Part shown: positions 15,131 through 38,569 of the stretch, piece after piece
Position numbering within the stretch: position 1 is the first letter of the stretch
How the letters are laid out: the number at the start of each line of letters is the position of its first letter
Assembly (NCBI RefSeq): GCF_006345805.1
Contig: NW_021835740.1
Span: 1-39,282, forward strand
Length of the DNA stretch: 39,282 nt
Direction of reading: 5' to 3'
Source: Octopus sinensis
Taxonomy: Eukaryota
The notes under the pieces: generated by a model
Told to the model about the DNA's origin: nothing
What the model saw: the letters and a program-made list of their open reading frames with translations, nothing else
Database searches by the model: none
Position numbers and translations under genes: made by a program

Positions 15131-16963
15131 ATGACACGTGCTATATTTCGGTATTTATTACGAATTCTTGTGATTGGACTATGTTTACTAACTATAGCCT
15201 GGTTCAAAATGGATTTTATTTTTAAGAATTATTGGAAGGATCCAGTCTTTAAGATGAAACACGAAAGAAAACCTGAGCATACTTCTGATGAATATCTCAT
15301 TGATACAATCGGTTGTAATATACTAGCATTCCAGGTTCCATTAGATGATTTTGATATTAATCGTTCTCCAGTGGTATGCCCTGGTCCACCAAGGTTAACA
15401 AAAGTCGTTGGTGCAATGTTGTACGTGAACCAATCAATTAAAGCAGTTCATTACTCGGACAAAATTAAACGCTGTCAGAAGTGGAATATTAAACGAGGTG
15501 ACAACGATAATAGTATTGTTCTTGGAAAACCGATTACCTTTCATAACCAAACGAAAATTGATGCAGAGTTCAGTTTGATAAAATGTGAAGGAGTTAATAA
15601 TTCCGTGTTATATACAGATTTCCACAGTCGTATCATTGATAAAGAACATGTTCGGAAGAAGTTGAAATCTCAGTCTGGTAAAAGAGCTGAAGATCGTCCG
15701 CTTAGTGTTCTTCTTATTGGAATTGATTCAACGTCTCGCAATAGCTTCTCTAGACAAATGCCTCGTTTAAAGAAGTACCTTCTAGAAACACTAAAAGCTT
15801 ATTCGTTCCCTGGATTTACAAGGGTTGGTAAAAATACCCTACCAAATTTACTAGCATTATTATCAGGAAAATTTTTGGAGGAGACTAAGTGGCGTTCCGG
15901 CCAGGTTTATGATTCCGTGGATCTTTTATGGAAAAACTATAGTTCGAGAAATGCCATAACATTTATAGCAGAGGATGACCCCGACATAACAGCATTCAAT
16001 TATGCAGCGCGTGGTTTTCGAAAACAACCAACTGATTATTATTTTAGACCTTTGACTATTGCAATGAACAAGAACAAATTTCGGAACAAGTTCTGTGTAG
16101 GCCCCCTTCCTGAGACGGATTATGTAGAACATTATACCAAGCAGTTTTTAGAAAAGTATAAAACGTCTTTTTATTTTGCTCTCACATTTTTCACACGTTG
16201 GACGCACGATGACTTGCATGGTGCGGCTAGATGGGAAGACAAGCTTTTGGGGTTTTTTCAGTGGCTTCATCAATCAAAAACACTAAACAACACTTTACTA
16301 CTTTTCTTCGGGGATCATGGTTACCGCATGGGTGGATTTCGTACAACTGTCGCTGGAAGTCATGAAGCAAATTTACCTTTTTCATTTTTTATTGTCCCAG
16401 AATGGTTCAAGATCAAACACAAATCAAAAGCCAATTCTATTCATAGAAACCAAAATCGTCTTGTGACACTTTTCGATTTTCATGCCACTCTTTCTGAGAA
16501 TCTGAACAGAGGGGAACAAACTCGAATGATGACGAGTAACAGAAGCATCAGTCTTATGTCACCAATACCAAGTAACAGAACTTGCAAGGGAGCAGAAATA
16601 CCTGCACAATTCTGTGAGTGTTTCTCAGCAAGAAAGCAACTGAGAGTTAAAAATGTGAACGTGACCGAAGCAGCCATCGCTGTTGTGAAAACACTGAATA
16701 AACGTTTAGAAAAAGCAAAAGCGAAAAAATGCGCAAAACTGAAATTGAAAAAGGTAATACGTGCTTATAAATATAGAACTACATACTCAGTAACGTTAAA
16801 AGTGTCACCAAGTGAAGGAGTTTTCCAATCTTTGGGAGAGTATCGTGGGAAAAACTTTCACCCGTTTGGAGAAATTTTACGAATCAACATATATGGTAAC
16901 CAATCTCATTGCGTCAAAATACGTAAACTGAAACCGGTTTGCTTTTGTACGAAAACCGTTTGA
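15131..16963 (+). CDS. DUF229-family protein (alkaline phosphatase/sulfatase-like superfamily), 610 aa, predicted type II membrane anchor; paralogue A
   Basis: Uninterrupted ORF; N-terminal hydrophobic segment; motifs SVLLIGIDSTSR, RVGKNTLPN, WTHD, FFGDHG, NRTC..AEIP.QFCEC, YGNQSHC...CFC characteristic of DUF229; paralogue at 36668-38569. Confidence 0.9.
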   Translation: MTRAIFRYLLRILVIGLCLLTIAWFKMDFIFKNYWKDPVFKMKHERKPEHTSDEYLIDTIGCNILAFQVPLDDFDINRSPVVCPGPPRLTKVVGAMLYVNQSIKAVHYSDKIKRCQKWNIKRGDNDNSIVLGKPITFHNQTKIDAEFSLIKCEGVNNSVLYTDFHSRIIDKEHVRKKLKSQSGKRAEDRPLSVLLIGIDSTSRNSFSRQMPRLKKYLLETLKAYSFPGFTRVGKNTLPNLLALLSGKFLEETKWRSGQVYDSVDLLWKNYSSRNAITFIAEDDPDITAFNYAARGFRKQPTDYYFRPLTIAMNKNKFRNKFCVGPLPETDYVEHYTKQFLEKYKTSFYFALTFFTRWTHDDLHGAARWEDKLLGFFQWLHQSKTLNNTLLLFFGDHGYRMGGFRTTVAGSHEANLPFSFFIVPEWFKIKHKSKANSIHRNQNRLVTLFDFHATLSENLNRGEQTRMMTSNRSISLMSPIPSNRTCKGAEIPAQFCECFSARKQLRVKNVNVTEAAIAVVKTLNKRLEKAKAKKCAKLKLKKVIRAYKYRTTYSVTLKVSPSEGVFQSLGEYRGKNFHPFGEILRINIYGNQSHCVKIRKLKPVCFCTKTV

Positions 16964-17390
16964 TTTCTATTTAATCGTCTTTTCTACATTCGTTCATATA
17001 ACTTATTAAATGTTTTCTTAAAGGTTTCCAGCATCAAACTAAACACATGTAACATAATAACCATTGATCCAAATAACAATTAATTATATACCCTCTTCTA
17101 TAAACAGCCAGAATTGCCTATAAAATATTGTACTCATAAAACGGGTGTCATCGACTTTAGGAATAGGTATCACAAACTCGTTGAGACGGAAAATGGGATA
17201 TGAACTAGTTGACTGATTCCGTTTGAGAAAGAATCTTTTGTTCACAATATTTGATTATTTACATTTATGTCCTACATTTCCATGAGCCTTTTCTGGTGGG
17301 ATTTTACTTGTACTTTTCTCAATAAGGTCATGATAACTATTCCGAATGTCCGCCAATAAGCTGCTTTGCGCCCGTTTCGCGAGTGCAAAC

Positions 17391-17552
17391 TCTGATATCC
17401 TCTTAATATCTTGCGATATCCCATGATATCCTCCTGCATCCTCTGATACCCTCTGGCATTCTCTGATATCCTCTGATATTTTGTGATATTCTCTAGTAAT
17501 CTCTGATTCCCTGTGGTATCCTCTCACTTCCTCTGGTATCCTGCAGATATCT
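17391..17552. repeat. Degenerate 10-bp minisatellite, consensus CTCTGATATC (~16 units)
   Basis: CTCTGATACC, CTCTGGCATT, CTCTGATATC, CTCTGATATT, TTGTGATATT... in strict 10-bp phase. Confidence 0.85.
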
Positions 17553-17778
17553 GTTATACACTTCATCCTCAGACTATTTACAAATAAATTATGCTAATGT
17601 CTCAGAATCATTGAATACATTTAAAACAAACAGCTTGTGGACGATCTGCCTGGGGTTAAACTAGTAGTAACATTCAACAGCTACTTTGATGTAGCGATTG
17701 GCTTTGATCTCTTACTACATTGATCTCTTCTTGAGATTTTTCTACTAGCCATTTTGCTTGTTCCAAATTATGAGATGT

Positions 17779-18010
<232 letters not shown>

Positions 18011-18522
18011 GTAATTGAATAAGGTGGAGTCAACATTCATTTGTAATCACTACAACTGTTTCCACGCAATGTAGTTCTCCAGTTTTGCAGTTATTTGGTT
18101 ATGTAACCGTTTCTCTGCATTAAGAAATCTTGTGTTCCATCACCTGATGAAACATAACTCCTGATGAAACAAAACAACATCTCATAGGTCACGAACTCCT
18201 CATCAGTTATCGGCCACAGGGTCAAACGCTGTTTTGAAATTTTTAACGATAATAGTGGACCCTTCTTGTGGTTCCGGCACAAGAGGCTGTCAGGAAATAG
18301 GACCAAAAAGATAACAGGTCGAGGGCGAACAAACAATAAATGGATAAACAAGCTATACATAAGTGGACATACGAACATGCATAGATGTGACTCAAGACTT
18401 GACCATTAGTGGACGGACGAGGGACAAAGACGAAATATTATGAACAGAATACAGTCTTAGGGCCACACAGAGACGAAAGTAAGGGTAACGTTGAGAGGAA
18501 AATCCTAAATTAGAAACAGAAG

Positions 18523-18646
<124 letters not shown>

Positions 18647-18721
18647 TATGTGTATACAGCATGGCCGCGGCCTTCGGGCTAAAGCATTTTAAAGGATTTT
18701 AAGGATATATATATATACTCT

Positions 18722-19126
18722 CTTTTTACTCTTTTAATTGTTTCAGTCATTTGACTGCGGCGCTGCTGGAGCACCGCCTTTAATCGAGCAACTCGACCCC
18801 GGGACTTATTCTTTTGTAAGCCCAGTACTTATTCTATCGGTCTTTTTTGCCGAACCGCTAAGTAACGGGGACATAAACACACCAGCATCGGTTGTCAAGC
18901 AATGCTAGGGGGACAAACACAGACACACAAACATATATATATATATATATATATACATATATACGACGGGCTTCTTTTCAGTTTCCGTCTATCAAATCCA
19001 CTCACAAGGCTTTGGTCGGCCGAGGTTATAGTAGAAGACACTTGCCCAAGGTGCTACGCAGTAGGACTGAACTCGGAACCATGTGGTTGGTAAACAAGCT
19101 ACTTACAACACAGTCACTCCTGCGCC

Positions 19127-19128
<2 letters not shown>
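18722..19128 (-). mobile_element. Full-length S1 SINE
   Basis: Head AGGCGCAGGAGTGACTGTG..., internal microsatellite and CTTTTACT tail; aligns with 2094-2521 and 26260-26707. Confidence 0.9.
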
Positions 19129-19159
<31 letters not shown>

Positions 19160-19233
19160 ATATATATATATATATATCTATATATATATTATATATATAT
19201 ATATTATATATATATTATATATATATATATATA

Positions 19234-20056
19234 TATAATTAATTTTATTGTATCGCATTTATCTTTGTTTACATATTCTCTCGATAAATTTCTGACCGTT
19301 AGACGATATACCACAATCCCCTATTTTGTCGGGTTTGTTCGGAGTCTGCGCAGTGTTTTGAATAGTTTAGAAAGAGCATTTCGATAGACGCACATGGATC
19401 TATTGGTATGGTCTTTCCATCGTTAACAGGAATCTTACTGAAGAGCCAGCCTGAGTAAATAAATACTATTTTTATTACTGAATTTGGCGAATAAGAAAAG
19501 TTAAGTTTGTAAAAGTTTTTAATTCTCATCTCACTAAATTTATCCAGCTATTGTGTATCTAGTACACTCTTCGCCTTGAATGTAATGATATATGTATAAT
19601 ATATGGCGTGTACTGGTACACCGGCGATTATAATTAATTTTATTGTATCGCATTTATCTTTGTTTATATATTCTCTCGATAAATTTCTGACCGTTAGACG
19701 ATATACCACAATCCCCTATTTTGTCGGGTTTGTTCGGAGTCTGCGCAGTGTTTTGAATAGTTTAGAAAGAGCATTTCGATAGACGCACATGGATCTATTG
19801 GTATGGTCTTTCCATCGTTAACAGGAATCTTACTGAAGAGCCAGCCTGAGTAAATAAATACTATTTTTATTACTGAATTTGGCGAATAAGAAAAGTTAAG
19901 TTTGTAAAAGTTTTTAATTCTCATCTCACTAAATTTATCCAGCTATTGTGTATCTAGTACACTCTTCGCCTTGAATGTAATGATATATGTATAATATATG
20001 GCGTGTACTGGTACACCGGCGATTATAATTAATTTTATTGTATCGCATTTATCTTT

Positions 20057-20061
<5 letters not shown>
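19234..20061. repeat. 395-bp tandem repeat, 2.1 copies, between (TA)n tracts
   Basis: Units start at 19234, 19629, 20024; identical 76-aa ORFs offset by 395. Confidence 0.95.
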
Positions 20062-20097
<36 letters not shown>

Positions 20098-20098
<1 letters not shown>

Positions 20099-20620
20099 TA
20101 GCATTAAAGACCTGTCGTTGCCGGGTCATAGTGCTAGTGTATGTATATATGTGTATATATATGTGTACATATTACATGTACATCTATATATACATCTACA
20201 CATGAAATACAAAACACAAAGTTATATCTTGAAAACGCTAGTGATAACAATACTCAAAATATATAACAGACTGGAATTGTTAGCCCGTCTCTTGTAATTT
20301 CGATCAATTGTATCTTGTCTTCCCTCTTGTATACAAGTGTGGCTACAATCCAGCATACCTCTACTTCTGGCGCGGGGTACATTTTAAATTTTCTTCCGGG
20401 ACGTCCTACGTCCCAGATATAAAGGTAGAAGTAAAATATTTCCACTTTGCAAGTTCGAGTCGAGTACTCCCTTGCACGCTCCGTTAACTCGAACCTTGCT
20501 TCTATTGTGGCGAATTTACCGCCTCTGATTAGATACCTTTCATAGTCGCACTAAGACACTTTTCGAAGGTGCTTTCCTCTATGTGTTCAAATCTTCTTTT
20601 TTCTCTACATTGTATACTTT
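20098..20620 (-). mobile_element. Helitron-like element, family 2 (3' end present; 5' limit uncertain)
   Basis: Minus strand ends GACCCGGCAACGACAGGTC hairpin + TTTAATG + CTAG|T; body homologous to 6050-6260. Confidence 0.55.
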
Positions 20621-20629
20621 ATAGACAAT

Positions 20630-21030
20630 AGTTTTTCCTAGCGGTGTCATATGAAATTGTCACCCATAATTATGACCCTAGTATCGATCTATTGCATTTC
20701 AATCTGTTTTAGATTTAGGGTTAGTTAGGGTTAGGGGTGGGGGGAGGGTATCTTTTTTTCTTCACAAATGTAAATAAACCCAATCTGTTTCTTAAACGAG
20801 GGACATATTCATACGACACAGAATGATTTTACCTCAATGGACGTCATTGATTGGTTGAAATTGCAGAAATTGATGAAAAAACAACAAATATCTTACAAAC
20901 TATAGAATTTTCTCAATAAAGCCAAGAGAAAAAGATGTTTTATAGACACATTCTATCAGTATACGAAGTTTAAATTTTTTTAGTTATTTAGAAATTATGT
21001 TAAAAACTGCCGTTCAAACCGAAAAGATCC
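20630..21030. mobile_element. MITE containing TTAGGG-like repeats (left TIR truncated)
   Basis: Aligns end to end with 33700-34100; right TIR AAAAACTGCCGTTCAAACCGAAAAGATCC. Confidence 0.85.
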
Positions 21031-21501
21031 GTAGAATGTAATCTTTAGCCATTTAGAATCAAATCTACTGGGAGTTGCCAACAGGTTTCTAGTTAATGAA
21101 GAGGAATCAATCAATGTCAGACAATCTACTAGACTCTCAATATACTGTAATCATATAGGTACAATGATACTAATAACCTGATGTTAGAATTCATTGTACA
21201 TAAGCTTCAGAGAAAACGGTAGGCGAGTACAGATCGTAGTAAATTGTATAAATGACAAAGGAACATGAAAATATGTGATGTACTTCACTAGCTTACAGAT
21301 GTTTCTGCTGTCGAGTGCAGTGCACTCATAGTTGAGTGCTTGTGCATCATGTCGTAGTTTCGTCGGAGCTTTAAAAATTATACAAGCATGTATACATACG
21401 TATTATGCATATATGTAAGAATATATGTATGTACGTATGTACGTATGTATGTATGTATGTATGTATGTATGTATGTATGTATGTATGTATGTATGTATGT
21501 A

Positions 21502-21536
<35 letters not shown>

Positions 21537-21685
21537 ATGTATGTGTGTATGTATCTATGTGTGTATGTATGTATCAGTGCTTCCTAAGCCTTTCAAACTA
21601 GCTTTTACGAGCCCAAAATGATTTTTCAATAGAGGCTTCATCTTTCTTTTTCAGCAACTCGTCGTATAAACATTTGATTTCATTA

Positions 21686-21715
21686 TTTAATTATTATTAA
21701 TCATTATTATTATCA

Positions 21716-21749
<34 letters not shown>

Positions 21750-21751
21750 CA

Positions 21752-21813
<62 letters not shown>

Positions 21814-22050
21814 GTTATTTTCTTTTTATCAGGGGTTTTGTTGGAGCTCCTGAAGTCTTGCATGCGTAGCGGGTTATCTACCTGCACCCTGCAGTACCGT
21901 TCTTTTCGGCTATCTATTACTTTCCTGATTATTCTGACCGTGCCAAGGAGCCAAATCTTTTTTGTAACAGTTCTACTGGGCACTCTATTTCTTTTATAAT
22001 CCTCTTGATGCCTTCTGATACTATTTCCAACCACCCAACAATAACTGACA
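21686..22050 (-). mobile_element. 3' end of R4/Dong-like (RLE) LINE joined to (TAA)n
   Basis: KIWLLGTVRIIRKVIDS matches the C-terminal LLGTARILR motif; short 3' UTR then (AAT)n at 21690-21815. Confidence 0.6.
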
Positions 22051-22227
22051 CTAGCTTCACTTTCATCCTTTTTTCCTTAGCCGGGCTATTTCGTACTTAA
22101 GAGGGTTGTATCTATCTTTTCGTCTTCTTTCTTGTCTATTCGAGGGTCAAAGAGGCAACATCGACTATATAGCATATGTGGTGCACCATGTCCACCGCCT
22201 CCATGTCCGGTCTGTTATGCTCTAGCA

Positions 22228-22500
22228 CAAGGGTTCCCAACCTTATTTTGCTTGTGGGCCCCCTGGGAGCTTATCATCTATGGACCCCATATATGCACAT
22301 ATAAATTTCTGAAATAAAATATTTGTTTGTAGGTTAGTAAAAACTAACAATGAAACAATTTCGTTATGTTCATAATAAATTCTAAATACAAATCTTGAAA
22401 ATTTCAATAAATTCAGGTACCTCTCCTGGAAAACAAAATTTATATATGGACCCACAAATCACAATTTTTTACTCGTGGGCTCCCTGGTTGGGAACCTCTG
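22228..22500. mobile_element. hAT-type MITE (273 bp)
   Basis: TIRs CAAGGGTTCCCAACC / GGTTGGGAACCTCTG; exact 8-bp TSD CTCTAGCA at 22220-27 and 22501-08. Confidence 0.92.
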
Positions 22501-22514
22501 CTCTAGCACCTGAT

Positions 22515-22705: not shown

Positions 22706-22734
22706 GGATTCTTCTTCTTCTTCTTCTTCTTCTT

Positions 22735-22735
22735 A

Positions 22736-22812
<77 letters not shown>

Positions 22813-29615: not shown

Positions 29616-29699
29616 AAGCTTTGTCGACCCGACAGAAGCACACTAAACCCGTACCTCCGAGGGCGAGCTCCAGCTGATGCTCCAGGAACTGGAGGTCTC

Positions 29700-30797: not shown

Positions 30798-30799
30798 CA

Positions 30800-31558
30800 C
30801 TAGAGCAGTCTTCCCGTTCTTTGTAGTCCTACCACCGTTCGCCGCCGTCTCGCCTCGTCACCAGGCTTGGCCCTCTTCGTCACCATCTTCCGCACCGAAG
30901 GCTTCACCAAACGCAAGTTCCTCCGACAGTCCATCCACACCTGTGGCCCCTCCACAGTGAGCACCATACAGTCCTTCTGAGCCCCGAGAGACAGGGGTCC
31001 AGACACCAAAGGACTCAGACACGGAACATCAACCGCAGCGGCCACCACACACACAGCTGGCTCCTTGGACTCAGTGACATCAGCTCCAGACTTCACAAGC
31101 TCACACTCAGCAAGCTTTTCGTCCTGAGTCCCGAAAGACAGGGGTCGAGATGCCAAAGGCTCCAGACACGAAACAACAGCAGCAGACAACACACACTCAA
31201 CAGGCTCCTCGGGCTTCTCAATATCAGACTCAGCGGGCCTTTCGGGTCCAGCATCCACCACAGGTTCAACATCACAGGGCTCCTCCGACCCACACTCTTC
31301 ACTTTCCACTTCATTTGACGGGCAATCTCCGCCCACAGGACCATCCCTATCCCCGGTCCAACACCGATCCTCCAAGGCTGACCCATCCGCAACCTCAAGC
31401 TCTTGCTGATCTGCCCACAGGCCCTGTCGCCTTCTACGCATCTCTTCGTTGAATGCGCGTGTCTGCGCAATCTGGCCCCTCAACATCTCCACAATCAAGG
31501 CCAGCGAGATCTCTTTCTCTCCAATCTGGCTACCAGTTCGTGCCTCCACCGAATCCAT
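30800..31558 (-). CDS. gag-position ORF of the LTR element, ~252 aa from MDSVEA (283 aa from upstream ATG in the LTR)
   Basis: Open frame directly after the PBS; coiled-coil-like N-terminus, acidic middle, internal repeat (EPVECV..PCLxPLxSxPLSxGxQ); no CCHC knuckle seen. Confidence 0.55.
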   Translation of the reverse strand: MDSVEARTGSQIGEKEISLALIVEMLRGQIAQTRAFNEEMRRRRQGLWADQQELEVADGSALEDRCWTGDRDGPVGGDCPSNEVESEECGSEEPCDVEPVVDAGPERPAESDIEKPEEPVECVLSAAVVSCLEPLASRPLSFGTQDEKLAECELVKSGADVTESKEPAVCVVAAAVDVPCLSPLVSGPLSLGAQKDCMVLTVEGPQVWMDCRRNLRLVKPSVRKMVTKRAKPGDEARRRRTVVGLQRTGRLL

Positions 31559-31592
31559 AGCGAACAACCGATCGACCGCAGCAATCAGGACA

Positions 31593-31610
31593 ATCCCACT
31601 TCTGACACCA
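31593..31610 (-). other. Primer-binding site complementary to tRNA-Leu(CAA) 3' end
   Basis: TGGTGTCAGAAGTGGGAT two nt inside the 5' LTR; matches the conserved ...ATCCCACTTCTGACACCA end of metazoan tRNA-Leu(CAA). Confidence 0.9.
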
Positions 31611-31612
31611 GT

Positions 31613-32666
31613 TGTTACGAACCTGCCGTCACTCAAACTCTTCGGAAACACGGGACCCTACCAAGTCGAGCGACGACGATTGACCGGCTCGATCGAACGG
31701 GGAATTCGCCACGGAACGAGAGAATTCGGTGGGGGAGAATGGCAGCGAACTCGGCAACCGGCGACCGGAAAGAACAACAACAACAACAGCAGGAGGAGAT
31801 ACAGAGAGAGACGACGGAAGGCAATTGGCCTACGTTTAAAAATAGTTTATAACAATTACGACATCAAATACAATGTGATACATATCAGAGATACGTTAAA
31901 GAAAATAACATGCAAGAAAACAACAAAATCAAAGCATTTAAACAGTTCACGTCGAATCAAAACAAATAATGTTCACATTAAAGTCTTTCTCTTTCTTTCT
32001 CTATTCAACACAGTTCTTTCTTTTTCTTCCTTCCTTTTTTTTTTTTTTCACATCAATTCTCTTTTTAGTTCAACAATTCTTTTCACAATGTCTTTTACAA
32101 TCTCATTTCTTTTCTTTAACAACTCTTTTTAACACAATTCTCATCAAAGCATAAACAACACATACCGTTACATTTTCTAGTTACAACAATTTCAGAAACT
32201 CCCACTACGAATAGCCAATGCCTTCATGCCGTAATCCCTCTCTCTCAGTTCCTTAATCCTATCTGCCTGTCTTCCTCTACGCTGTCATCCTCTCGCTGTC
32301 TGTCTGTCTTTCTCAACGATGTAGTTGCCTTCGCCATCGCCACCTGCTTGGCCGACCGTCCGCATCGCTCCTGTCTCTCACGCCAGCTACCCTGTTGTCA
32401 ACTCCTCTGTTCTCGACTGCCTCACCGACTGACTGCTCGACTACAATCCCAACTGCCGACTAACTCCAAAAAGTCCAGCGCGTCGCGTTTTTAAAGGGGT
32501 GGTTCCTCGACCCTTCTTTGACCGGAACAAGACCAAAGGTCTCCTCCGAATACATAAACCTCCCCAGAAACTGACAGAACAAAAGATTTACCCGTCTCCC
32601 TGACGTCAGATCACAAAAGTAGGTCGCAGGGCTCTTATTTTCTGAACTGAACTGACCTCCATATTA
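31613..32666 (-). repeat. 5' LTR
   Basis: Direct repeat of 28545-29602; terminal TG mutated to TA. Confidence 0.95.
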
Positions 32667-32959
32667 ATATTAATAACTAATTAATAAACAGCTTTCTTTA
32701 TTATAGCTGATTATGACATAGCATCATTATCTATTCCTATTTCCTAATGAACAGTGCGGTGCTAGTTACCTAGTGTCCCTGGAACCGTTCATTACAACAA
32801 AAAGGTGAACCATCTGTAAAATCAAACACAATTTATGGATTGAATATGTTAAAAGCACAAAATTTGAATGCAACATTTGATGCTGTGTTTCACTTGTTGA
32901 ATACAGAAGAAAGTACTTTAATTTTCTGCTGTGTCAAGGAAGAGTCCTTTTGTTCTTGT

Positions 32960-33185
32960 GCCTTATAATTTAACACACTCACCGCTAAAATTTCCACTTA
33001 TTTCTTATATTTATTTTCCTGAAATTTTCGTTGTCTTTTCAATAGTCTTGACTCTGTTAAATTATAAGGCAAACAAAAAAAGAAAAGAAAATGGCTCTCC
33101 CCAGACACAACAGAATATGCTTCAACACACGAACTCACATAAAGAATCTTGCAAACCAAATCCGAAATCGAAATACTTCGATATT
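32960..33185. mobile_element. Dispersed repeat related to the 1-453 palindrome family
   Basis: Shares TTATAATTTAACAC..CACC..TAAAATTTCC, CTCTCCCCAGACACAACAG and GCAAACCAAATCC; carries a 16-bp inverted repeat GCCTTATAATTTAACA (32960-75 / 33055-70). Confidence 0.7.
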
Positions 33186-33196
33186 TTTCTGTAGTA

Positions 33197-33429
33197 AGGC
33201 GGCGACCTGGTAGAAACGTTAGCACGCCGGGCAAAATGCTTAGAGGTATTTCGTCTGCCGCTACGTTCTGAGTTCAAATTCCGCCGAGGTCGACTTTGCC
33301 TTTCATCCTTTCGGGGGTCGATAAACTAAGTACCAGTTCCGCACTGGGGTCGATGTAATCGACTTAATCCCTTTGTCTGTCCTTCTTTGTCCTCTCTGTG
33401 TTTAGCCCCTTGTGGGTAGTAAAGAAATA
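33197..33429 (+). mobile_element. Full-length S2 SINE
   Basis: Aligns with 25553-25783. Confidence 0.9.
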
Positions 33430-33679
33430 GGTATTTAGGACTATACTATCTAACGATGTTGTTGCTCAGCTCCCAACATAACAATCCCGTTTCTTTAACA
33501 GTGTGGAGGAGGTTATATTATATAACATTATATTATATTAGCATACCTGTGTCATCAAATATGCTGGCTTCAAGGCAGTCAGTGATAGCTTCAAGGCAGT
33601 CAGTGAGTATGTTAGTGGTTGCAGAGAGAGAAGAAGAGCCAAGGAGTCCCGTCCTTTATCACCCTGTGTTATAATGTTT

Positions 33680-34102
33680 GAGGGATCTTCGGTTTGAACG
33701 GCGGTTTTTCTAGCGGTATCATATGAAATTGTCACCCATAATTATGACCCTAGTATCGATCTTTTGCATTTCAATCTGCTTTAGGGTTAGGGTTAGGGTT
33801 AAGGGTGGGGGGAGGGTATCTTTTTTTCTTCACAAATGTAAATAAACCCAATCTGTTTCTTAAACGAGGGACATATTCATATGGCACAGAATGTTTTTTA
33901 CCTCAATAGACGTCATTGATTGGTTGAAATTGCAGAAATTGAAGAAAAAAACAACAAATATCTTACAAACTATAGAATTTTCTCAATAAAGCCAAGAGAA
34001 AAAGATGTTTTATAAACACATTCTACCAGTATACGAAGTTGAAAAGTGTTTAGTTACGTGGAAATTATTTTTAAAAACTGCCGTTCAAACCAAAAAATCC
34101 TC
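33680..34102. mobile_element. MITE with ~30-bp TIRs and internal (TTAGGG)3
   Basis: GGATCTTCGGTTTGAACGGCGGTTTTT ... AAAAACTGCCGTTCAAACCAAAAAATCC; second copy at 20630-21030. Confidence 0.88.
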
Positions 34103-34397
34103 AAATTTAATTTTACAGGGTCATTTTTTTCACCTCCCTTGCAATACAAAAACAAATAGAAATAAATATAAGGTTTTACTTGAAACAAGGTGCTGCTGTG
34201 ACAAGCTGTTGTTATATGGTAGACAGAAAGGAAAACGAGAGATATTTTTTATCCTATCATACTTTTCCTCAATTAAAAAATATTTCTTTTGTTCATTTTA
34301 AACGACTGGAAATGTTTCTTTTCTTTCCAAACTTTTAATTTCGTATTTCACACATCCACTTGCGGTGTTTGACTTTTTCTTTATCGTGAAAATATAT

Positions 34398-34626
34398 ATT
34401 TCTTTATTGCCCACAAGGGGCTAAACACAGAGGGGACAAACAAGGACAAAGAGATTAAGTCGATTACATCGACCCCAGTTCGTAACTGGTACTTAATTTA
34501 TCGACCCTGGAAGGATGAAAGGCAAAGTCGACCTCGGCGGAATTTGAACTCGGAACGTAACGACAGACGAAATACAGCTACGCATTTCACCCGGCGTGCT
34601 AACGTTTCTGCCAGCTCACCGTCTTT
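34398..34626 (-). mobile_element. Full-length S2 SINE
   Basis: Reverse complement aligns with the other S2 copies. Confidence 0.9.
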
Positions 34627-35149
34627 ATTGTGAAAATATATTAAAGGAGGGAAAAGAGGTTAAGGTTTTTTTTTAATACGAGTTGCAAATGCTTCAGAAT
34701 GTGAAATACAATAAAATGTTTTCAAACAAGTCAGGAAAAAAAAAACAAACAAAAAAAAAACAATCAGAAATTACTCATTTTGTCCCAGATACCGAAGAAA
34801 AAGGTTTAATTTCATGAGAAACATTTGAACATATGTGGAATAATTCTAAAGCCAGAAAAAAGTGCTTTTAGCTGTTGAGAGATGCAATTTAATAATTAAA
34901 ACTAAATTCAAAATTTAAATTTTGGAACATATTTTTTTACTTCTTCATGTAAGGCCGAAGGAAGATTTCAATGCTCCACTGAAATAATAAAGTTTAGCAG
35001 TGCCAGTATATGTGTGTTCGTGTGTGTGTTGGTTCGTGCGTGCGTGTAGGCCCTTTGCAAATGTTCATTTCAAGTTCAGTCGTACGTTGTAAGACTTCTT
35101 TCAATCTATTTTTTAAATCTCTATATACACTCACACATGCGCGAGCACA

Positions 35150-35310
35150 CACACATACATACATACAACATACATACGTACGTCCGTCCGTCCGTGCATA
35201 CATACATACATACATACATACATACATACATACATACATACATACATACATACATACATACATACATACATACATACATACATACATACATACATACATA
35301 CATACATACA
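35150..35310. repeat. (CATA)n microsatellite
   Basis: Direct reading. Confidence 0.97.
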
Positions 35311-35689
35311 TTTTCAGGAGTCGTAGTTTTTAATTTTCTGTCATTTCCTGCTTTGAGGGACTGATGTCGCTAAAGTGGAAAAATCTGCTTTCCGTCTTTT
35401 TTTATTTTAAGCTCAAATTGTTGTCGCTAAAGTGAAGAAAACCTGTGGTCATTTATCATTAAAGAGAAGCCATTTCATTTTTATAGGAAGTCGAGGTGTC
35501 TGCAGTTTGAAATACAACCTCTACATGCAATACATGTAAGGTTGGTGGAAAGAGGAGGGGCCCTCCAGTATTGAGTGCTTTATATCCTTCGTAGAAAGGG
35601 GTCCCAATATCGAGGAGGGCCCCAGTATCAAGAGAGACCCAATGCGATTGCCCCTCGTCACCCACTAAATCCAGCACGGTGAGACACAG

Positions 35690-35910
35690 GGCCGGTTACT
35701 TGGTTTCTGTTACGTTTAATGGATCACAACATTCTCCCTGAAAAAGACGCTAGAGCGCTGCAAGGTTACCCATTTACAGCCGAGTAGACTGCAGCAATGT
35801 GAAATGAAGTGTTTTTCTTTATGAACGCAACACACTGCACGGTCCAGGTATCGAAACAAGGAACTCGAGATCGGGAGTATAAGCACTAACCGCTAGACCA
35901 CGCACCTTCG
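35690..35910 (-). mobile_element. Old S4-type SINE
   Basis: Minus strand GAAGGTGCGTGGTCTAGCGGTTAG...TTTCGATACCTGGACC...CACTTCATTTCACATTGCTGCAGTCTACTCGGCTGTAAATG resembles 13581-13720. Confidence 0.65.
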
Positions 35911-36667
35911 CAGTTATTCAGGTAACGACAAAACTTAATTTAGAAAATGTGCTAAATTCCAATTATATTCAATCAATTAGAAATTGGTGAAATGATGTTT
36001 TAATGAAGAACAATAGGGAAAAAGAACAATCACAAAACCAACAAATACTGAAAGGAAATGCAATATAATTTATTTTCAAACAGTTTCTGCCATGGAGTAT
36101 TACGGTAGATATCAGAGGGTATCAAAAAGATATCAAGGTTTCTATTCCACTTGAGATATAACTGACTGGTTTATTTAATAAAATTAGATAAATATAATTA
36201 AGCTCTTTCCCATTATTGATAGACAATTTTTCTATTTAAATAATCTATTTAAATAATCTAACACACTCATGAGACGGGTGCAAAATAACTGACTGGCGGA
36301 CATTCGGAATAGTTATCACGACCTTATTGAGAAAAGTACGAGTAAAAATTCCCAAGAAAAGGCTCATGAACATAAATGTAAAGAGTTAAATATTTTGAAC
36401 AAAAGACTCTTTCTCAGAAGGAAACGATCAACGAATTCGTGGCTCTTTTCCTTCTCTATGAGTTTGTGATGTCTATTCTTAAAGTCCACCGCTCAACTAC
36501 GACACCCGTTTCATGAATACAATAGTTTATTTACCAATCCTGGCTGTTGTTAATAGAAGAGTCTCTATAATTATGTTATGCTATTTAGATGAATGAGTAA
36601 AATGCTGGAAAATATCTTGGAAACATATATGAGTGTACAAAAGACGATTAAATAGAAATCAAACGGT

Positions 36668-38569
36668 TCACACACAAAAACAAAACGGTTTCAGGTTAGG
36701 AGTGTTGACGCAATGAGATTGGTTACCATATATGTTGATTCGTAAAATTTCTCCAAACGGGTGAAAGTTTTTCCCACGATACTCTCCCAAAGATTGGAAA
36801 ACTCCTTCACTTGGTGACACTTTTAACGTTACTGAGTATGTAGTTCTATATTTATAAGCACGTATTACCTTTTTCAATTTCAGTTTTGCGCATTTTTTCG
36901 CTTTTGCTTTTTCTAAACGTTTATTCAGTGTTTTCACAACAGCGATGGCTGCTTCGGTCACGTTCACATTTTTAACTCTCAATTGCTTTCTTGCTGAGAA
37001 ACACTCACAGAATTGTGCAGGTATTTCTGCTCCCTTGCAAGTTCTGTTACTTGGTATTGGTGACATAAGACTGATGCTTCTGTTACTCGTCATCATTCGA
37101 GTTTGTTCCCCTCTGTTCAGATTTTCAGAAAGAGTGGCATGAAAATCGAAAAGTGTCACAAGACGATTTTGGTTTCTATGAATAGAATTGGCTTTTGATT
37201 TGTGTTTGATCTTGAACCATTCTGGGACAATAAAAAATGAAAAAGGTAAATTTGCTTCATGACTTCCAGCGACAGTTGTACGAAATCCACCCATGCGGAA
37301 ACCATGATCCCCGAAGAAAAATAGTAAAGTGTTGTTTAGTGTTTTTGATTGATGAAGCCACTGATAAAACCCCAAAAGCTTGTCTTCCCATCTAGCCGCA
37401 CCATGCAAGCGATCGTGATTCCAGTCTGTGAAAAAAATAAAAGCAAAATAGAAAGATGTCCCGTACAACTTTAGAAACTGCTTGGTATAATGTATAATTT
37501 GTTCAGACTCGGTGACAGGGCCCACACAGAATTCTTTGTGAGATCTATTCTTCGCCATCGCAAGTGTCAGCGGTCGAATATAGAAATCAGTCGGTGATTT
37601 CACAAAGCCACGGCGGTAAAAATTAAAGGCTCCAGTTCTTGGACGGTCCTCTACCAAAAGTGTTATAGCATTTTTGGAACTATAGTTTTTCCATATAAAA
37701 TCTACTGAGTCAAAAGACATACCTTGGTGATATTTACTTTCGTTCAAAAATTTTCCTGTTAATAACGGTATTATATTCGGAAGAGTATTCACACCAACCC
37801 TTGTAAATCCAGGGAACGAATAAGCTTTTAGTGTTTCTAGAAGGTACTTCTTTAAACGAGGCATTTGTCTAGAGAAGCTATTGCGAGACGTTGAATCAAT
37901 TCCAATAAGAAGAACACTAAGCGGACGATCTTCAGCTCTTTTACCAGACTGAGATTTCAACTTCTTCTGCACATGTTCTTTATCAATGATACGACTGTGG
38001 AAATCTGTATATAACACGGAATTATTAACTCCTTCACATTTTATCAAACTGAACTCTGCATCAATTTTCGTTTGGTTATGAAAGGTAATCGGTTTTCCAA
38101 GAACAATACTATTATCGTTGTCACCTCGTTTAATATTCCACTTCTGACAGCGTTTAATTTTGTTCGAGTAATGAACTGCTTTAATTGATTGGTTCACGTA
38201 CAAAATTGCACCAACGACTTTTGTTAACCTTGCTGGACCAGGGCATACTACTGAGGAACGATTAATGTTAAAATTAGTTTCAGGTATATCAATTGCTAAT
38301 ATTTTACAACCAATTGTATCAATGAGATATCTATCAGGTTCGTTTGCAAGCGCATCTTTCGATGTGTTTTCTAATTTTTTCTCATGTTTGTTCTTGTTGC
38401 TTATAAAACTTAACATATTCTTAGAAGTTTTGACGAGAGGTAAATACAATTTGAACCATGTATGGCAAAGTAGACATAATATAATTACAAGGGATATATA
38501 GGATATTCGAAGGAACATGCGATTCATTATTAACCCAAAGAAATTAAGGATTCCATTGATATTCTTCAT
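36668..38569 (-). CDS. DUF229-family protein, 633 aa (could start at the later MNRMF); paralogue B
   Basis: Uninterrupted ORF; hydrophobic N-terminus; IGIDSTSR, NTLPN, WNHD, FFGDHG motifs; extensive identity to paralogue A. Confidence 0.9.
   Translation of the reverse strand: MKNINGILNFFGLIMNRMFLRISYISLVIILCLLCHTWFKLYLPLVKTSKNMLSFISNKNKHEKKLENTSKDALANEPDRYLIDTIGCKILAIDIPETNFNINRSSVVCPGPARLTKVVGAILYVNQSIKAVHYSNKIKRCQKWNIKRGDNDNSIVLGKPITFHNQTKIDAEFSLIKCEGVNNSVLYTDFHSRIIDKEHVQKKLKSQSGKRAEDRPLSVLLIGIDSTSRNSFSRQMPRLKKYLLETLKAYSFPGFTRVGVNTLPNIIPLLTGKFLNESKYHQGMSFDSVDFIWKNYSSKNAITLLVEDRPRTGAFNFYRRGFVKSPTDFYIRPLTLAMAKNRSHKEFCVGPVTESEQIIHYTKQFLKLYGTSFYFAFIFFTDWNHDRLHGAARWEDKLLGFYQWLHQSKTLNNTLLFFFGDHGFRMGGFRTTVAGSHEANLPFSFFIVPEWFKIKHKSKANSIHRNQNRLVTLFDFHATLSENLNRGEQTRMMTSNRSISLMSPIPSNRTCKGAEIPAQFCECFSARKQLRVKNVNVTEAAIAVVKTLNKRLEKAKAKKCAKLKLKKVIRAYKYRTTYSVTLKVSPSEGVFQSLGEYRGKNFHPFGEILRINIYGNQSHCVNTPNLKPFCFCV

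What the first reader, a model, noticed from the sequence alone, without database searches (positions are those of the whole stretch)
15131..38569. Inverted DUF229 paralogues: ~99%-identical scaffold blocks sandwich a ~59%-identical active-site segment
Seen: A 15374-15829 equals B 38248-37793 (456 bp, ~5 differences) and A 16213-16917 equals B 37409-36705 (705 bp, ~4 differences), including synonymous sites. The intervening 383 bp is colinear without indels but differs at 52 of 128 residues, with abrupt boundaries. N-termini, C-terminal tips and 3' flanks are also clearly diverged, so the duplication is old. Inference: recent gene conversion between the inverted copies homogenises most of the enzyme while the catalytic-pocket segment is excluded, as if selection keeps two substrate specificities on a shared chassis. 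This may be an undescribed diversification system in an orphan enzyme family.
Basis: partly seen in the sequence, partly recalled or inferred. Interest (0 to 1): 0.85.

Follow-up and report, generated by a model that had tools for sequence, protein, structure and literature searches.

The report
Octopus enzyme twins, partly homogenised
Two neighbouring, oppositely oriented octopus genes for an uncharacterised enzyme keep copying most of their sequence onto each other while a 384-base stretch around the predicted catalytic centre stays very different; this is a clean new example of a known evolutionary pattern, not a new mechanism.

Summary
Genes A (15131-16963, +) and B (38569-36668, -) are intronless, convergently oriented DUF229 genes in an Octopus scaffold. 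Two blocks (456 and about 702 bp) differ at 5 sites each (dS about 0.01). The 384 bp between them differ at 126 nt and 52 of 128 residues (dS about 1.36).

- The N-terminus, island, C-tip and 3' flank cluster by paralogue.
- Block 2 clusters by species. Block 1 does so in the vulgaris/sinensis lineage.
- One block edge moved about 22 bp between sister genomes.

This is recurrent interlocus gene conversion, known as "mosaic concerted evolution". It appears in three independent assemblies, so it is not an assembly collapse.

The island runs from the predicted Thr nucleophile to an invariant His. The predicted metal ligands lie in the homogenised blocks. Both island versions are under purifying selection and keep the same 21 of 23 family-conserved residues. 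Copy A is the derived, faster-evolving one.

Selection for two specificities is plausible but unproven. A divergence barrier to recombination explains today's sharp edges equally well. There is no sign of a dedicated diversification system. Verdict: a new member of a known kind, of moderate interest.

The parts
15131..16963 (+). Gene A: intronless 610-aa DUF229 ORF (stop included). This is the derived, faster-evolving copy.
   Evidence: ORF list; Pfam DUF229 E 9e-106; AlphaFold pLDDT 88.8 with an N-terminal helix at residues 2-34 that I read as a membrane anchor, and an alkaline-phosphatase-superfamily fold; orthologues in O. vulgaris and O. bimaculoides.
36668..38569 (-). Gene B: intronless 633-aa DUF229 ORF (stop included). 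This is the conserved, ancestral-type copy, convergent (tail-to-tail) with A.
   Evidence: ORF list; Pfam DUF229 E 6e-102. Its island is closer than A's to the single Argonauta gene and to other cephalopod homologues. Its position relative to NELF-A matches the Argonauta gene.
15131..15373 (+). Diverged N-terminal segment of A (membrane anchor and stem). Partner in B is 38249-38569 (-).
   Evidence: dS 1.32, dN 0.43, three indels. Clusters by paralogue with 100% bootstrap. The last 29 codons are less diverged (dS 0.62).
15374..15829 (+). Homogenised block 1 in A (456 bp). It contains the predicted metal-binding Asp199 (motif GIDSTSR).
   Evidence: 5 differences, dS 0.010. The four sinensis/vulgaris sequences form one clade at 99.8%. 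In O. bimaculoides, A and B differ by 6.8%, equal to the interspecies distance.
37793..38248 (-). Homogenised block 1 in B.
   Evidence: Same as for A. In O. vulgaris, B keeps B-type bases at the positions equivalent to A 15808, 15817 and 15823 (all shared with O. bimaculoides B) and has its own private base at 15811, whereas the window's B carries A-type bases at all four positions. The tract edge therefore moved about 22 bp, in the A-to-B direction, after the two genomes split.
15830..16213 (+). Unconverted island in A (128 codons, A residues 234-361). It runs from the predicted Thr236 nucleophile helix (NTLPN...) to the invariant His359.
   Evidence: 126 nt and 52 aa differences, dS 1.36, dN 0.30, omega 0.22. 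pS plateau of 0.6-0.75 with steep edges. Paralogue-first tree at 100%. A-orthologue omega 0.37, significantly below 1 (p = 0.007). The profile alignment to sulfatases places Thr236 at the formylglycine position.
37409..37792 (-). Unconverted island in B (B residues 260-387), the ancestral-type version.
   Evidence: B-orthologue omega 0.26. 10 B-unique against 25 A-unique residues relative to Argonauta (chi2 6.4). Both copies keep the same 21 of 23 family-conserved positions.
16214..16915 (+). Homogenised block 2 in A (702 bp). It contains the predicted metal ligands Asp395-His396 (GDHG) and the C-terminal domain.
   Evidence: 5 differences, dS 0.013. Clusters by species: O. bimaculoides A+B 95%, sinensis/vulgaris 100%.
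36707..37408 (-). Homogenised block 2 in B.
16916..17385 (+). Diverged C-terminal tip and homologous 3' flank of A. Partner in B is about 36264-36706 (-).
   Evidence: C-tip dS about 0.4-0.5. 3' flank p-distance 0.23 with indels; each copy is nearest to its own orthologues in the distance matrix. The divergence is intermediate, which suggests an older conversion domain that has shrunk.
17386..36263 (.). Spacer between the inverted copies. It is full of microsatellites, SINE-like copies and an LTR-like element, and shows no A/B homology.
   Evidence: It is colinear (not inverted) with O. vulgaris. In O. bimaculoides only about 4.5 kb separates the two genes.

Best explanation
**What it is.** Two intronless DUF229 genes in an Octopus genome. 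They encode predicted type-II-membrane enzymes of the secretory pathway, in the alkaline-phosphatase superfamily, with a probable Thr nucleophile.

**Origin (inferred).** The pair arose by an inverted duplication well before the O. bimaculoides / O. vulgaris split.

**Mechanism (inferred from shown patterns).**
- Ordinary homologous-recombination repair has repeatedly copied sequence between the two copies. This is interlocus (non-allelic) gene conversion. It occurred in both directions and independently in different lineages.
- It acts in two tracts of 456 and about 702 bp.
- The 384-bp island between the tracts, the N-terminal anchor/stem and the 3' end have not been exchanged, the island and N-terminus for roughly 8-10 times the depth of the species split. 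The 3' end escaped later (C-tip dS about 0.4-0.5; 3' flank about twice the species divergence).

**Shown here.**
- Silent-site homogenisation of the blocks.
- Species-first trees for the blocks and paralogue-first trees for the other segments.
- Movement of one tract edge between sister genomes.
- Purifying selection on both island versions.
- Retention of the same conserved residues in both copies.

**Why the island persists (inferred).** Copy A probably acquired a functional difference in its catalytic-centre segment early. It is the derived, faster-evolving copy. Converted alleles would then have been selected against. Today the 33% nucleotide divergence also blocks heteroduplex extension mechanically, which gives the abrupt edges.

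I put about 0.9 on the gene-conversion mosaic and about 0.5 on selection (rather than barrier alone) as the reason the island exists.
For: - **Silent-site contrast.** dS is 0.010 and 0.013 in the blocks against 1.36 in the island and 1.32 in the N-terminus. Third-position Fisher p = 4e-35; permutation 0 of 20,000.
- **Per-block trees with three Octopus genomes plus Argonauta**.
  - Paralogue-first for the N-terminus, island and C-tip (96-100%).
  - Species-first for block 2 (95% and 100%) and for block 1 in the sinensis/vulgaris lineage (99.8%).
  - Species dS is 0.11-0.20, against 0.01 between paralogues within a species.
- **Events after the sinensis/vulgaris split**.
  - Site 15754 carries a species-specific base in both copies.
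  - The block 1 edge lies at 15830 in the window's B but by 15808 in O. vulgaris B.
  - The linked variant 15652/15654 is shared between copy A of the window and copy B of O. bimaculoides.
- **Lineage-specific tract edges in O. bimaculoides.** There is 1 difference in 16522-16800, then 7 in 16801-16876.
- **Same mosaic in an independent, colinear chromosome assembly**.
- **Island content.** Thr236 aligns with the sulfatase formylglycine position and His359 with the conserved sulfatase His. The fold matches LtaS, LtaP, EptC, YejM and sulfatases.
- **Constraint on both islands.** Both copies keep the same 21 of 23 family-conserved island positions. Omega is 0.37 for A (p = 0.007 against 1) and 0.26 for B.
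- **Asymmetry.** A has 25 unique residues against 10 for B, with charge reversals next to conserved residues: D283R, D285R, R356D, D361R.
- **No third donor found.** In an exhaustive search of 1.84 billion representatives, the best non-octopod match to A's island is at most 52% identical.
Against: - There is no signal of positive selection. Island omega is 0.22 overall, and the A and B branches have the same N:S ratio.
- dS in the island is near saturation, so its age is imprecise.
- Segments with no obvious role in specificity (the N-terminal anchor, the 3' flank) also escaped conversion.
- GC3 is not raised in the converted blocks, so the GC-bias signature often used as support for conversion is absent.
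- Half of the O. bimaculoides B island and the start of its block 2 lie in an assembly gap. The right island edge could therefore be compared only between the two sister genomes.
- The function of DUF229 is unknown and no expression data were available.
- The catalytic roles of Thr236 and His359 rest on a weak profile alignment (domain i-E 0.07) plus secondary-structure position. I had no access to model coordinates.
Confidence: 0.8

Rival explanations
1. The gene-conversion mosaic is the same, but the island persists for purely mechanical or neutral reasons. A stretch escaped conversion by chance (or through a burst of change in copy A), passed the divergence threshold, and now blocks heteroduplex extension. 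No difference in substrate specificity is being maintained.
For: - The edges are abrupt and pS forms a flat plateau, rather than a peak decaying from a selected site.
- The N-terminus and 3' flank escaped too.
- There is no excess of replacement changes: omega 0.22, and equal N:S on both branches.
- A is faster at silent sites and in the 3' flank as well, which suggests a rate effect rather than adaptive change.
Against: - An interior 384-bp island flanked on both sides by actively converting tracts should be eroded from its edges unless converted alleles are removed. One edge did move 22 bp between sister genomes.
- The island is the segment most conserved among other cephalopod homologues (Kimura distance from B to P0006 is 0.53, against 1.08 and 0.80 in the blocks), yet it is the most diverged between A and B.
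- Both versions are kept under purifying selection.
Confidence: 0.35
2. The duplication is young (which explains the 99% blocks). The island, and separately the N-terminus and 3' end, were imported into one copy from a third, distant DUF229 paralogue by ectopic conversion.
For: - A's island branches outside B + Argonauta + P0006/P0007 in a protein tree (86.6% bootstrap).
- The A branch is 2.2 times longer at both synonymous and non-synonymous sites.
Against: - No third octopod DUF229 lineage turned up in the 90%-cluster search or in the exhaustive representative search with A's island; the next best match after the octopod and cephalopod homologues is 46% identical.
- No other fragment is present in the window.
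- The A-type N-terminus, island, C-tip and 3' flank are all present and paralogue-specific in O. bimaculoides as well, so a 'young' duplication would already predate that split.
- A's higher rate is seen directly in orthologue comparisons over the same time span, which explains its long branch.
Confidence: 0.05
3. This is an assembly or polishing artefact. The near-identical blocks come from consensus collapse or from cross-mapped short reads used in polishing.
For: - Three paralogue-distinguishing sites in block 2 (16257, 16323, 16498) are reciprocally swapped between the window and O. vulgaris, while 16301 between them is not. Cross-talk during polishing could produce this.
Against: - The mosaic is reproduced in an independent chromosome-level assembly of a sister genome, colinear at 97-99%, and block 2 homogenisation also appears in O. 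bimaculoides.
- Polishing can erase only a few percent of difference, not the roughly 33% expected without conversion.
- Both copies share species-specific substitutions across the blocks (about 7% from O. bimaculoides).
- O. bimaculoides resolves 6.8% A/B divergence in block 1, so such differences can be assembled.
Confidence: 0.03
4. The blocks are identical only because of very strong purifying selection on the protein, or the pair arose by independent recent duplications in each lineage. No conversion is involved.
For: The blocks contain conserved metal-ligand motifs.
Against: - Synonymous sites are homogenised too (dS 0.01 against 0.11-0.16 between species).
- The blocks evolve at an ordinary rate between species (omega 0.34-0.51).
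- Independent duplications cannot give paralogue-first trees for the island, N-terminus, C-tip and 3' flank in the same genes.
Confidence: 0.01

Closest known systems
Mosaic concerted evolution of mammalian gene pairs (BMP8A/B, DDX19A/B, TUBG1/2; also TLR1/TLR6, EMR2/CD97), PMC2720389
   Same: There are two copies only. Some segments are homogenised by ongoing gene conversion and give species-first trees, while others diverge and give paralogue-first trees. Mosaic boundaries are conserved across species. The proposed meaning is the same: shared structural parts, diverging functional parts.
   Different: Here the genes are intronless, so the mosaic lies within one exon. The copies are inverted and convergent. 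The diverged part is an interior island at the predicted catalytic centre of an uncharacterised enzyme. No GC rise is seen in the converted parts.
Peaks or islands of divergence maintained against gene conversion: human red/green opsin exon 5 and RHCE/RHD (review PMC3924837); GOT1 paralogues of Tigriopus (PMC3728101)
   Same: Divergence is high in a short functional region and flanked by homogenised sequence. This is read as selection preserving a functional difference under the pressure of conversion.
   Different: In the opsins the selected sites are known and the peak is narrow around them. Here the island is a 384-bp plateau with silent sites near saturation, the selected sites are unknown, and a pure divergence barrier cannot be excluded.
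Arm-to-arm gene conversion in inverted repeats or palindromes (human Y palindrome P6, PMC3723533)
   Same: The copies are inverted on one chromosome and homogenised by intrachromosomal conversion. Inversions of the spacer are a possible by-product.
   Different: Y palindrome arms are more than 99.9% identical over many kb, including non-coding DNA. Here identity is confined to two coding tracts, the flanks are diverged, and the spacer is not inverted between the two genomes compared.
Thr-nucleophile members of the alkaline-phosphatase superfamily (LtaS/LtaP, EptC/EptA-type phosphoethanolamine transferases, YejM) and formylglycine sulfatases
   Same: The fold matches (Foldseek probability 1.0, TMt 0.46-0.57). 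The order of elements matches: Asp at the end of strand 1, nucleophile at the start of the next helix, and an Asp-His pair later.
   Different: Identity is only 10-14%. There is an extra N-terminal beta-rich domain and a C-terminal beta domain. The Cys/Ser-x-Pro-x-Arg sulfatase motif is absent (the sequence is NTLPN). The substrate is unknown.
Programmed diversification by cassette conversion (antigenic-variation loci, chicken Ig pseudogene conversion, diversity-generating retroelements)
   Same: Only the use of gene conversion between related sequences.
   Different: Those systems have many donors, a directional flow into one expressed site, and it is the variable region that is exchanged. 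Here there are two copies, exchange goes in both directions, and the variable region is the part that is NOT exchanged.

Membership tests
Pfam DUF229 (PF02995) | Match to the family HMM above the gathering score (25 bits) | tested here: met
   A scores 354.9 bits (E 9e-106) and B 342.4 bits (E 6e-102).
Alkaline-phosphatase superfamily (sulfatase / LtaS / EptA-like core) | Alpha/beta core fold shared with solved members | tested here: met
   AlphaFold model pLDDT 88.8, pTM 0.86. Foldseek against PDB gives 255 hits at E <= 1e-3; the top hits are 3lxq, LtaP/LtaS, EptC, YejM and sulfatases, all at probability 1.0.
Alkaline-phosphatase superfamily (sulfatase / LtaS / EptA-like core) | Metal-binding Asp after strand 1, a nucleophile at the N-terminus of the following helix, and a later Asp-His pair | tested here: inconclusive
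   D199, D395 and H396 are invariant in 27 family members, and T236 is conserved in 87%. T236 starts helix 236-245 and aligns with the formylglycine position of sulfatase 7lha (weak domain E-value). No model coordinates were available, and no biochemistry exists.
Formylglycine-dependent sulfatases (Pfam Sulfatase, PF00884) | Cys/Ser-x-Pro/Ala-x-Arg motif at the nucleophile position, and a score above the family threshold | tested here: not met
   The sequence at that position is N-T-L-P-N in both copies. Pfam Sulfatase scores are 23.9 and 20.6 bits, below the 25-bit cut-off.
Mosaic concerted evolution by interlocus gene conversion | In the homogenised tracts, paralogues within a species are more similar than orthologues between species, including at silent sites | tested here: met
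   A/B dS is 0.01 against 0.11-0.16 for orthologues. Species-first clades are supported at 95-100% for block 2 and 99.8% for block 1 in the sinensis/vulgaris lineage.
Mosaic concerted evolution by interlocus gene conversion | Other segments of the same genes give the paralogue-first (old duplication) tree | tested here: met
   N-terminus 100%, island 100%, C-tip 96% by bootstrap. In the 3' flank, each copy is nearest to its own orthologues in the distance matrix; no tree was built.
Mosaic concerted evolution by interlocus gene conversion | Copy number is stable at two, which excludes unequal crossing-over | tested here: met
   Two copies are present at the locus in the window, O. vulgaris and O. 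bimaculoides. Only A-type and B-type proteins were found for these species. Whole genomes could not be scanned.
Mosaic concerted evolution by interlocus gene conversion | Statistically significant fragment structure (GENECONV-type test) | tested here: met
   Permutation of the variable sites: longest identical run 277 nt against a maximum of 137 in 20,000 permutations.
Mosaic concerted evolution by interlocus gene conversion | Raised GC content in converted tracts (supporting feature, not defining) | tested here: not met
   GC3 is 0.30-0.33 in the blocks against 0.35-0.37 in the island.
Mosaic concerted evolution by interlocus gene conversion | Conversion tracts and shared polymorphism visible in population samples | not testable with these tools
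   No reads or population data were available. The only hints are variants shuffled between copies across genomes.
Selection-maintained island of divergence (Innan/Teshima model) | Demonstrated functional difference, or a selection signal centred on the island | tested here: inconclusive
   Both versions are under purifying selection (omega 0.26 and 0.37; p = 0.007 for A) and keep the conserved residues. There is no omega > 1, the N:S ratio is equal on both branches, and pS forms a plateau rather than a peak.
Programmed diversification system (cassette conversion, DGR-like) | Multiple donor cassettes, or a mutagenic template, directing change INTO the variable region | tested here: not met
   There are only two copies and no other fragment in the window. 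The variable region is the part not exchanged. Each island version is stable between species: 3-11% divergence.

The most novel reading that the evidence does not exclude
The island is actively protected by selection. The pair would then be a natural 'two heads on one chassis' enzyme system. Conversion keeps a co-adapted scaffold identical (metal site, N- and C-terminal beta domains, perhaps a shared partner or a heterodimer interface). A 128-residue cassette running from the Thr nucleophile to the conserved His sets two different substrate specificities. If so, the 52 differing residues, notably the charge reversals at A283, A285, A356 and A361, would directly mark the specificity determinants of the orphan DUF229 family. 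This family is large in invertebrates, and no substrate is known for it.
Probability: 0.2. Interest if true: 0.55.

Novelty: new member of a known kind. Interest (0 to 1): 0.35.

Why it matters
As evolution, this is a very clean single-exon example of mosaic concerted evolution. The mosaic dates to before the O. bimaculoides split, and conversion has continued independently in at least two octopus lineages. The case comes from a group (cephalopods) and an enzyme family (DUF229) for which I found no such report.

It also has two practical uses.
- Whole-gene trees or whole-gene dS for this pair would date the duplication wrongly by about two orders of magnitude. Short-read variant calls in the two blocks will cross-map between the copies.
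- If the island difference is functional, the natural A/B chimera shows which 128 residues to swap or mutate to find what DUF229 enzymes act on.

It does not reveal a new molecular mechanism.

Tried and rejected
- **Third-party donor for A's island.** I searched A's 128-residue island against 1.84 billion representative proteins. The best matches were the Argonauta gene (58%) and a cephalopod homologue (52%), and all others were at most 46%. No donor-like sequence turned up.
- **Extra DUF229 fragments or pseudogenes in the window.** tblastn found none.
- **Inversion of the spacer between genomes**, as expected from crossing-over between inverted copies. The window and O. vulgaris are colinear.
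- **GC-biased conversion signature.** It is absent.
- **Pairs in more distant cephalopod-like contigs (P0006, P0007).** Only single copies were seen on the contigs available, and the Logan contigs are about 4 kb, so this was uninformative.
- **Literature on DUF229 function.** I found only mentions in lists, for example enrichment in bivalves (PMC8059625). Most 'DUF229' text hits are DUF229x prefixes from phage-defence papers. PF02995/IPR004245 gave 2 papers.
- **Model coordinates.** I used secondary structure and conserved-position proximity instead.
- **tRNA and Rfam scans of the window.** Both were empty.
- **Branch polarisation with Argonauta for a selection signal.** The N:S ratio is equal on both branches.

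Full report
**1. What is in the window**

- The window is a 39,282-bp scaffold of an Octopus genome. Both proteins are in the public collection on a contig of exactly this length.
- It is colinear with chromosome OX597835.1 of O. vulgaris (GCA_951406725.2) at 97-99% identity. It is therefore a sister genome or individual, probably the assembly now called O. sinensis. That name is my inference from the RefSeq-style names attached to the clusters.
- The sequence is rich in microsatellites and transposon remnants.
- It carries two intronless ORFs in convergent orientation: gene A at 15131-16963 (+, 610 aa) and gene B at 38569-36668 (-, 633 aa). They are 19.7 kb apart.
- Both are clear members of Pfam DUF229 (E 9e-106 and 6e-102).

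**2. Check of the observation**

| Segment | Window coordinates (A / B) | Differences | dS |
|---|---|---|---|
| Block 1 | A 15374-15829 / B 38248-37793, 456 bp | 5 | 0.010 |
| Island | A 15830-16212, colinear, no indel | 126 nt, 52 of 128 residues | 1.36 (dN 0.30) |
| Block 2 | A 16213-16917 / B 37409-36705 | 5 | 0.013 |

- The N-terminal 81 alignable codons have dS 1.32 and three indels.
- The C-terminal tip and about 420 bp of 3' flank are homologous but diverged (77.6% identity with indels). The 5' flanks are unrelated.
- The contrast cannot be chance or protein-level constraint. Third-position differences are 3/386 in the blocks against 56/128 in the island (Fisher p = 4e-35).
- The longest identical run (277 nt) exceeds every one of 20,000 permutations of the variable sites; the permutation maximum was 137.
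- A 30-codon sliding window shows a pS plateau of 0.6-0.75 across the island, with both edges falling to zero within one or two windows.

**3.

*Related loci.* A protein search returned the orthologues, and I fetched their loci.
- O. vulgaris A and B: L002 and L003.
- O. bimaculoides A and B: L001. Only about 4.5 kb separates the genes there. A 495-N assembly gap removes the right half of B's island and the start of its block 2.
- Argonauta hians: L004, with a single gene in the 21.7-kb locus.

*Position.* The Argonauta gene lies next to NELF-A in the position and orientation of copy B.

*Per-block neighbour-joining trees, 500 bootstraps*.
- N-terminus, island and C-tip group by paralogue (100%, 100%, 96%). 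In the 3' flank, each copy is closest to its own orthologues in the distance matrix.
- Block 2 groups by species: O. bimaculoides A+B 95%, and the four sinensis/vulgaris sequences 100%.
- Block 1 groups the four sinensis/vulgaris sequences at 99.8%. In O. bimaculoides, A and B differ by 6.8% in block 1, the same as the distance between species. Block 1 was therefore last homogenised there at about the time of the split.

*Depth.* Orthologue dS between the window and O. bimaculoides is 0.11-0.20. The island's dS of 1.36 is roughly 8-10 times deeper, while the blocks' 0.01 is more than 10 times shallower.

These are the hallmarks of an old duplication followed by recurrent interlocus gene conversion, called 'mosaic evolution' in the literature (PMC2720389).

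**4. Conversion is recent, bidirectional and lineage-specific**

Among the two sister genomes:
- Site 15754 has a species-specific base present in both copies.
- O. vulgaris B keeps B-type bases at 15808, 15817 and 15823, shared with O. bimaculoides B. The window's B carries A-type bases up to 15829. The left edge of the island therefore moved about 22 bp after the two genomes separated, with A as donor.
- The linked pair 15652/15654 has one variant in copy A of the window and in copy B of O. bimaculoides. The other variant is in the remaining copies. The same two variants have been passed between loci.

In O. bimaculoides, the available part of block 2 has one difference in 16522-16800 but seven in 16801-16876. 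Its tract ends earlier than in the window.

By contrast, the outer edges (15373/15374 and 16917/16918) are the same in all three Octopus genomes. The right island edge (16212/16213) could be compared only between the two sister genomes, and it is the same there.

Divergence falls into age layers:
- N-terminus and island: dS near saturation.
- Codons 79-107: dS 0.62.
- C-tip: dS about 0.4-0.5.
- 3' flank: K about 0.27.

This suggests a conversion domain that was once wider and has shrunk.

**5. Artefact?**

- The mosaic is present in an independently produced chromosome-level assembly, and block 2 homogenisation also appears in O. bimaculoides.
- Both copies share about 7% of species-specific substitutions across the blocks.
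- Polishing with cross-mapped short reads could erase a few percent of difference. It could not erase the roughly 33% expected without conversion. O. bimaculoides resolves 6.8% in block 1.
- What could be an artefact is the reciprocal swap of sites 16257, 16323 and 16498 between the window and O. vulgaris, with 16301 between them unswapped. It may instead be polymorphism shared through conversion. Only reads can tell.

**6. What the protein is, and what the island contains**

*Model.* An AlphaFold model built from a 27-sequence alignment is confident (pLDDT 88.8, pTM 0.86). It shows an N-terminal helix at residues 2-34, which I read as a membrane anchor, then a beta-rich domain, an alpha/beta core and a C-terminal beta domain.

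*Cellular location (inferred).* Many invariant cysteines together with the anchor point to a type II enzyme of the secretory pathway.

*Fold.* Foldseek places the core in the alkaline-phosphatase superfamily. The nearest structures are 3lxq, LtaP/LtaS, EptC and YejM, followed by many sulfatases.

*Active-site residues.* A profile search against PDB sequences aligns the island's first motif, N-T-L-P-N-L-L-A-L-L-S-G, with the sulfatase C-x-P-S-R-x-x-x-x-T-G helix.
- Thr236 falls on the formylglycine position.
- The island's last motif, (T/N)-H-D, aligns with the conserved sulfatase His.
- Thr236 starts helix 236-245 in the model.
- The sulfatase Cys/Ser-x-Pro-x-Arg motif itself is absent, and the Pfam Sulfatase score is below threshold. 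This is therefore not a formylglycine sulfatase. A Thr-nucleophile phospho-type transferase or hydrolase is the better guess (inference).

*Where the predicted ligands lie.* The predicted metal ligands are Asp199 in block 1 and Asp395-His396 in block 2. Both are invariant in the family.

So 'active-site segment' is half right. The island spans from nucleophile to His and carries the highest density of family-conserved positions: 23 of 128, against 18 of 152 and 36 of 234 in the blocks. The metal site, however, is built from the shared blocks.

**7. Are both versions functional, and which is derived?**

- Both copies keep the same 21 of 23 family-conserved island positions.
- Between the window and O. 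bimaculoides, A's island has omega 0.37, below 1 at p = 0.007. B's has omega 0.26.
- B's island resembles the Argonauta gene and two more distant cephalopod-like homologues. A's island carries 25 unique residues against 10 for B (chi2 6.4) and falls outside the others in a protein tree (86.6%).
- Of the 52 differences, 25 lie within two residues of a family-conserved position. These include the charge reversals D283R and D285R next to the conserved Glu-Asp, and R356D and D361R around His359.
- No potential third donor exists in the searchable protein universe or in the window.
- A's long branch is explained by a higher rate, seen directly in orthologue comparisons.
  - On the same 153 unconverted codons, A has 37.3 replacement and 16.7 silent differences. 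B has 7 and 7 (p = 1.6e-6 and 0.048).
  - In the 3' flank, A has 56/426 differences against 31/432 for B (p = 0.0045).
- The blocks evolve at about the mean of the two rates.
- Polarised with Argonauta, the A branch has 20 silent and 46 replacement changes and the B branch 11 and 19. The N:S ratio is the same. There is therefore no evidence for positive selection, and A's faster silent rate remains unexplained.

**8. How it most likely works**

*Shown:* two tracts are kept nearly identical by repeated, bidirectional, lineage-independent sequence exchange, and an interior island is not.

*Inferred mechanism:*
- The exchange is ordinary homology-dependent repair between inverted copies on one chromosome (non-allelic gene conversion).
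- Tracts start in the identical blocks and stop where mismatch density rises abruptly. This explains the sharp edges and their near-stability.
- The blocks could not have regained enough homology for conversion after diverging to island levels. They have probably been in continuous concert since soon after the duplication. The island, like the N-terminus, must have escaped early.

*Why an interior island escaped.* An interior island flanked on both sides by active tracts should be eroded unless converted alleles are removed. That favours early selection for a difference in copy A. This is the Innan/Teshima 'peak of divergence' scenario (PMC3924837). The same reading has been applied to GOT1 paralogues in Tigriopus (PMC3728101).

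*The rival.* The flat plateau, the equal N:S ratios and the escape of the N-terminus and 3' flank also fit a barrier-only history. I put about 0.9 on the conversion mosaic and about 0.5 on selection as the cause of the island.

**9. Comparison with what is known, and novelty**

- The pattern matches mosaic concerted evolution as described for BMP8A/B, DDX19A/B, TUBG1/2 and TLR1/6, including mosaic boundaries conserved across species (PMC2720389).
- It also matches peaks or islands of divergence in opsins, RHCE/RHD and GOT1 (PMC3924837, PMC3728101).
- It shares the inverted geometry of Y-chromosome palindromes (PMC3723533), but not their kilobase-scale identity of non-coding arms.
- It is not a diversification system in the sense of cassette conversion or DGRs. 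There are two fixed versions, no donor array, and the variable part is the part that is not exchanged.
- I found no report of this gene pair or of any DUF229 function.

Verdict: a real, well-supported feature and a new member of a known kind. It would be a good textbook example and a useful pointer to possible specificity residues of an orphan enzyme family. It is not a new mechanism. Interest 0.35.

Noticed in passing
Window 15131-15373, 15830-16213, 16964-17385 versus 38249-38569, 37409-37792, 36264-36667; compared with L001: Copy A evolves about 2 times faster than copy B at silent sites and in the 3' flank, and about 5 times faster at replacement sites, in every segment that is not homogenised. 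The homogenised blocks evolve at about the mean rate. The cause is unknown; possibilities are a local mutation-rate difference, a repair difference, or constraint on B.
   Followed up: partly
Window 16257, 16301, 16323, 16498 (and partners in B); L002/L003: Three of the few A/B-distinguishing sites in block 2 are reciprocally swapped between the window and O. vulgaris, while the site between them is not. This is either polymorphism shared through bidirectional conversion or cross-talk from short-read polishing.
   Followed up: partly
Window 36668-38569 (-), protein P0003: The database model of gene B (582 aa) starts at Met52 of the 633-aa ORF. It therefore omits the hydrophobic N-terminal anchor that the ORF encodes and that aligns with A's anchor. 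The model is probably truncated at the N-terminus.
   Followed up: partly
L001 16882-17376 and 18888-20595: The O. bimaculoides chromosome assembly has N gaps inside gene B (removing the right half of the island and the start of block 2) and just upstream of it. This probably explains the mis-spliced 497-aa UniProt model (P0005). The two genes are only about 4.5 kb apart there, against 19.7 kb in the window.
   Followed up: yes
Window 4779-5997 (-): ORF fragments of a PIF1-like helicase (Pfam PIF1 E 3.7e-63; Pif1_2B domain). This is most likely a Helitron-type transposon remnant.
   Followed up: partly
Window 28544-32664: An element of about 4.1 kb bounded by direct repeats of about 1.06 kb (93-98% identical). 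Its core is GC-rich (52-60% GC) and contains a 308-bp tandem duplication (30178-30795). Its ORFs hit no Pfam family. It looks like a non-autonomous LTR-type element and is also present in O. vulgaris.
   Followed up: partly
Window 22493-22736, 25297-25784, 27404-27642, 33185-33437, 34436-34636: Copies of a SINE-like repeat of about 244 nt (77-97% identical) in both orientations, including two in tandem. ARAGORN and Rfam recognise no tRNA or other RNA family in the window.
   Followed up: partly
Window 10272-10629: A large near-perfect palindrome: 177-nt arms, 93% complementary, 4-nt loop, in an AT-rich region (foldback or MITE-like).
   Followed up: no
Window 19201-20060: About 860 bp that are absent from the colinear O. 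vulgaris locus. The stretch contains a 300-nt direct repeat at 100% identity with 395-nt spacing (19234-19533 / 19629-19928). It is either a recent tandem duplication or insertion, or an assembly artefact.
   Followed up: partly
L004 9803-11656: Argonauta hians has a single B-like DUF229 gene in the 21.7-kb fetched locus, next to NELF-A. It carries a Thr-rich insertion of about 10 residues (TTTTTTT) in the loop after the catalytic core. Copy A was either gained after the Argonauta split or lost there.
   Followed up: partly
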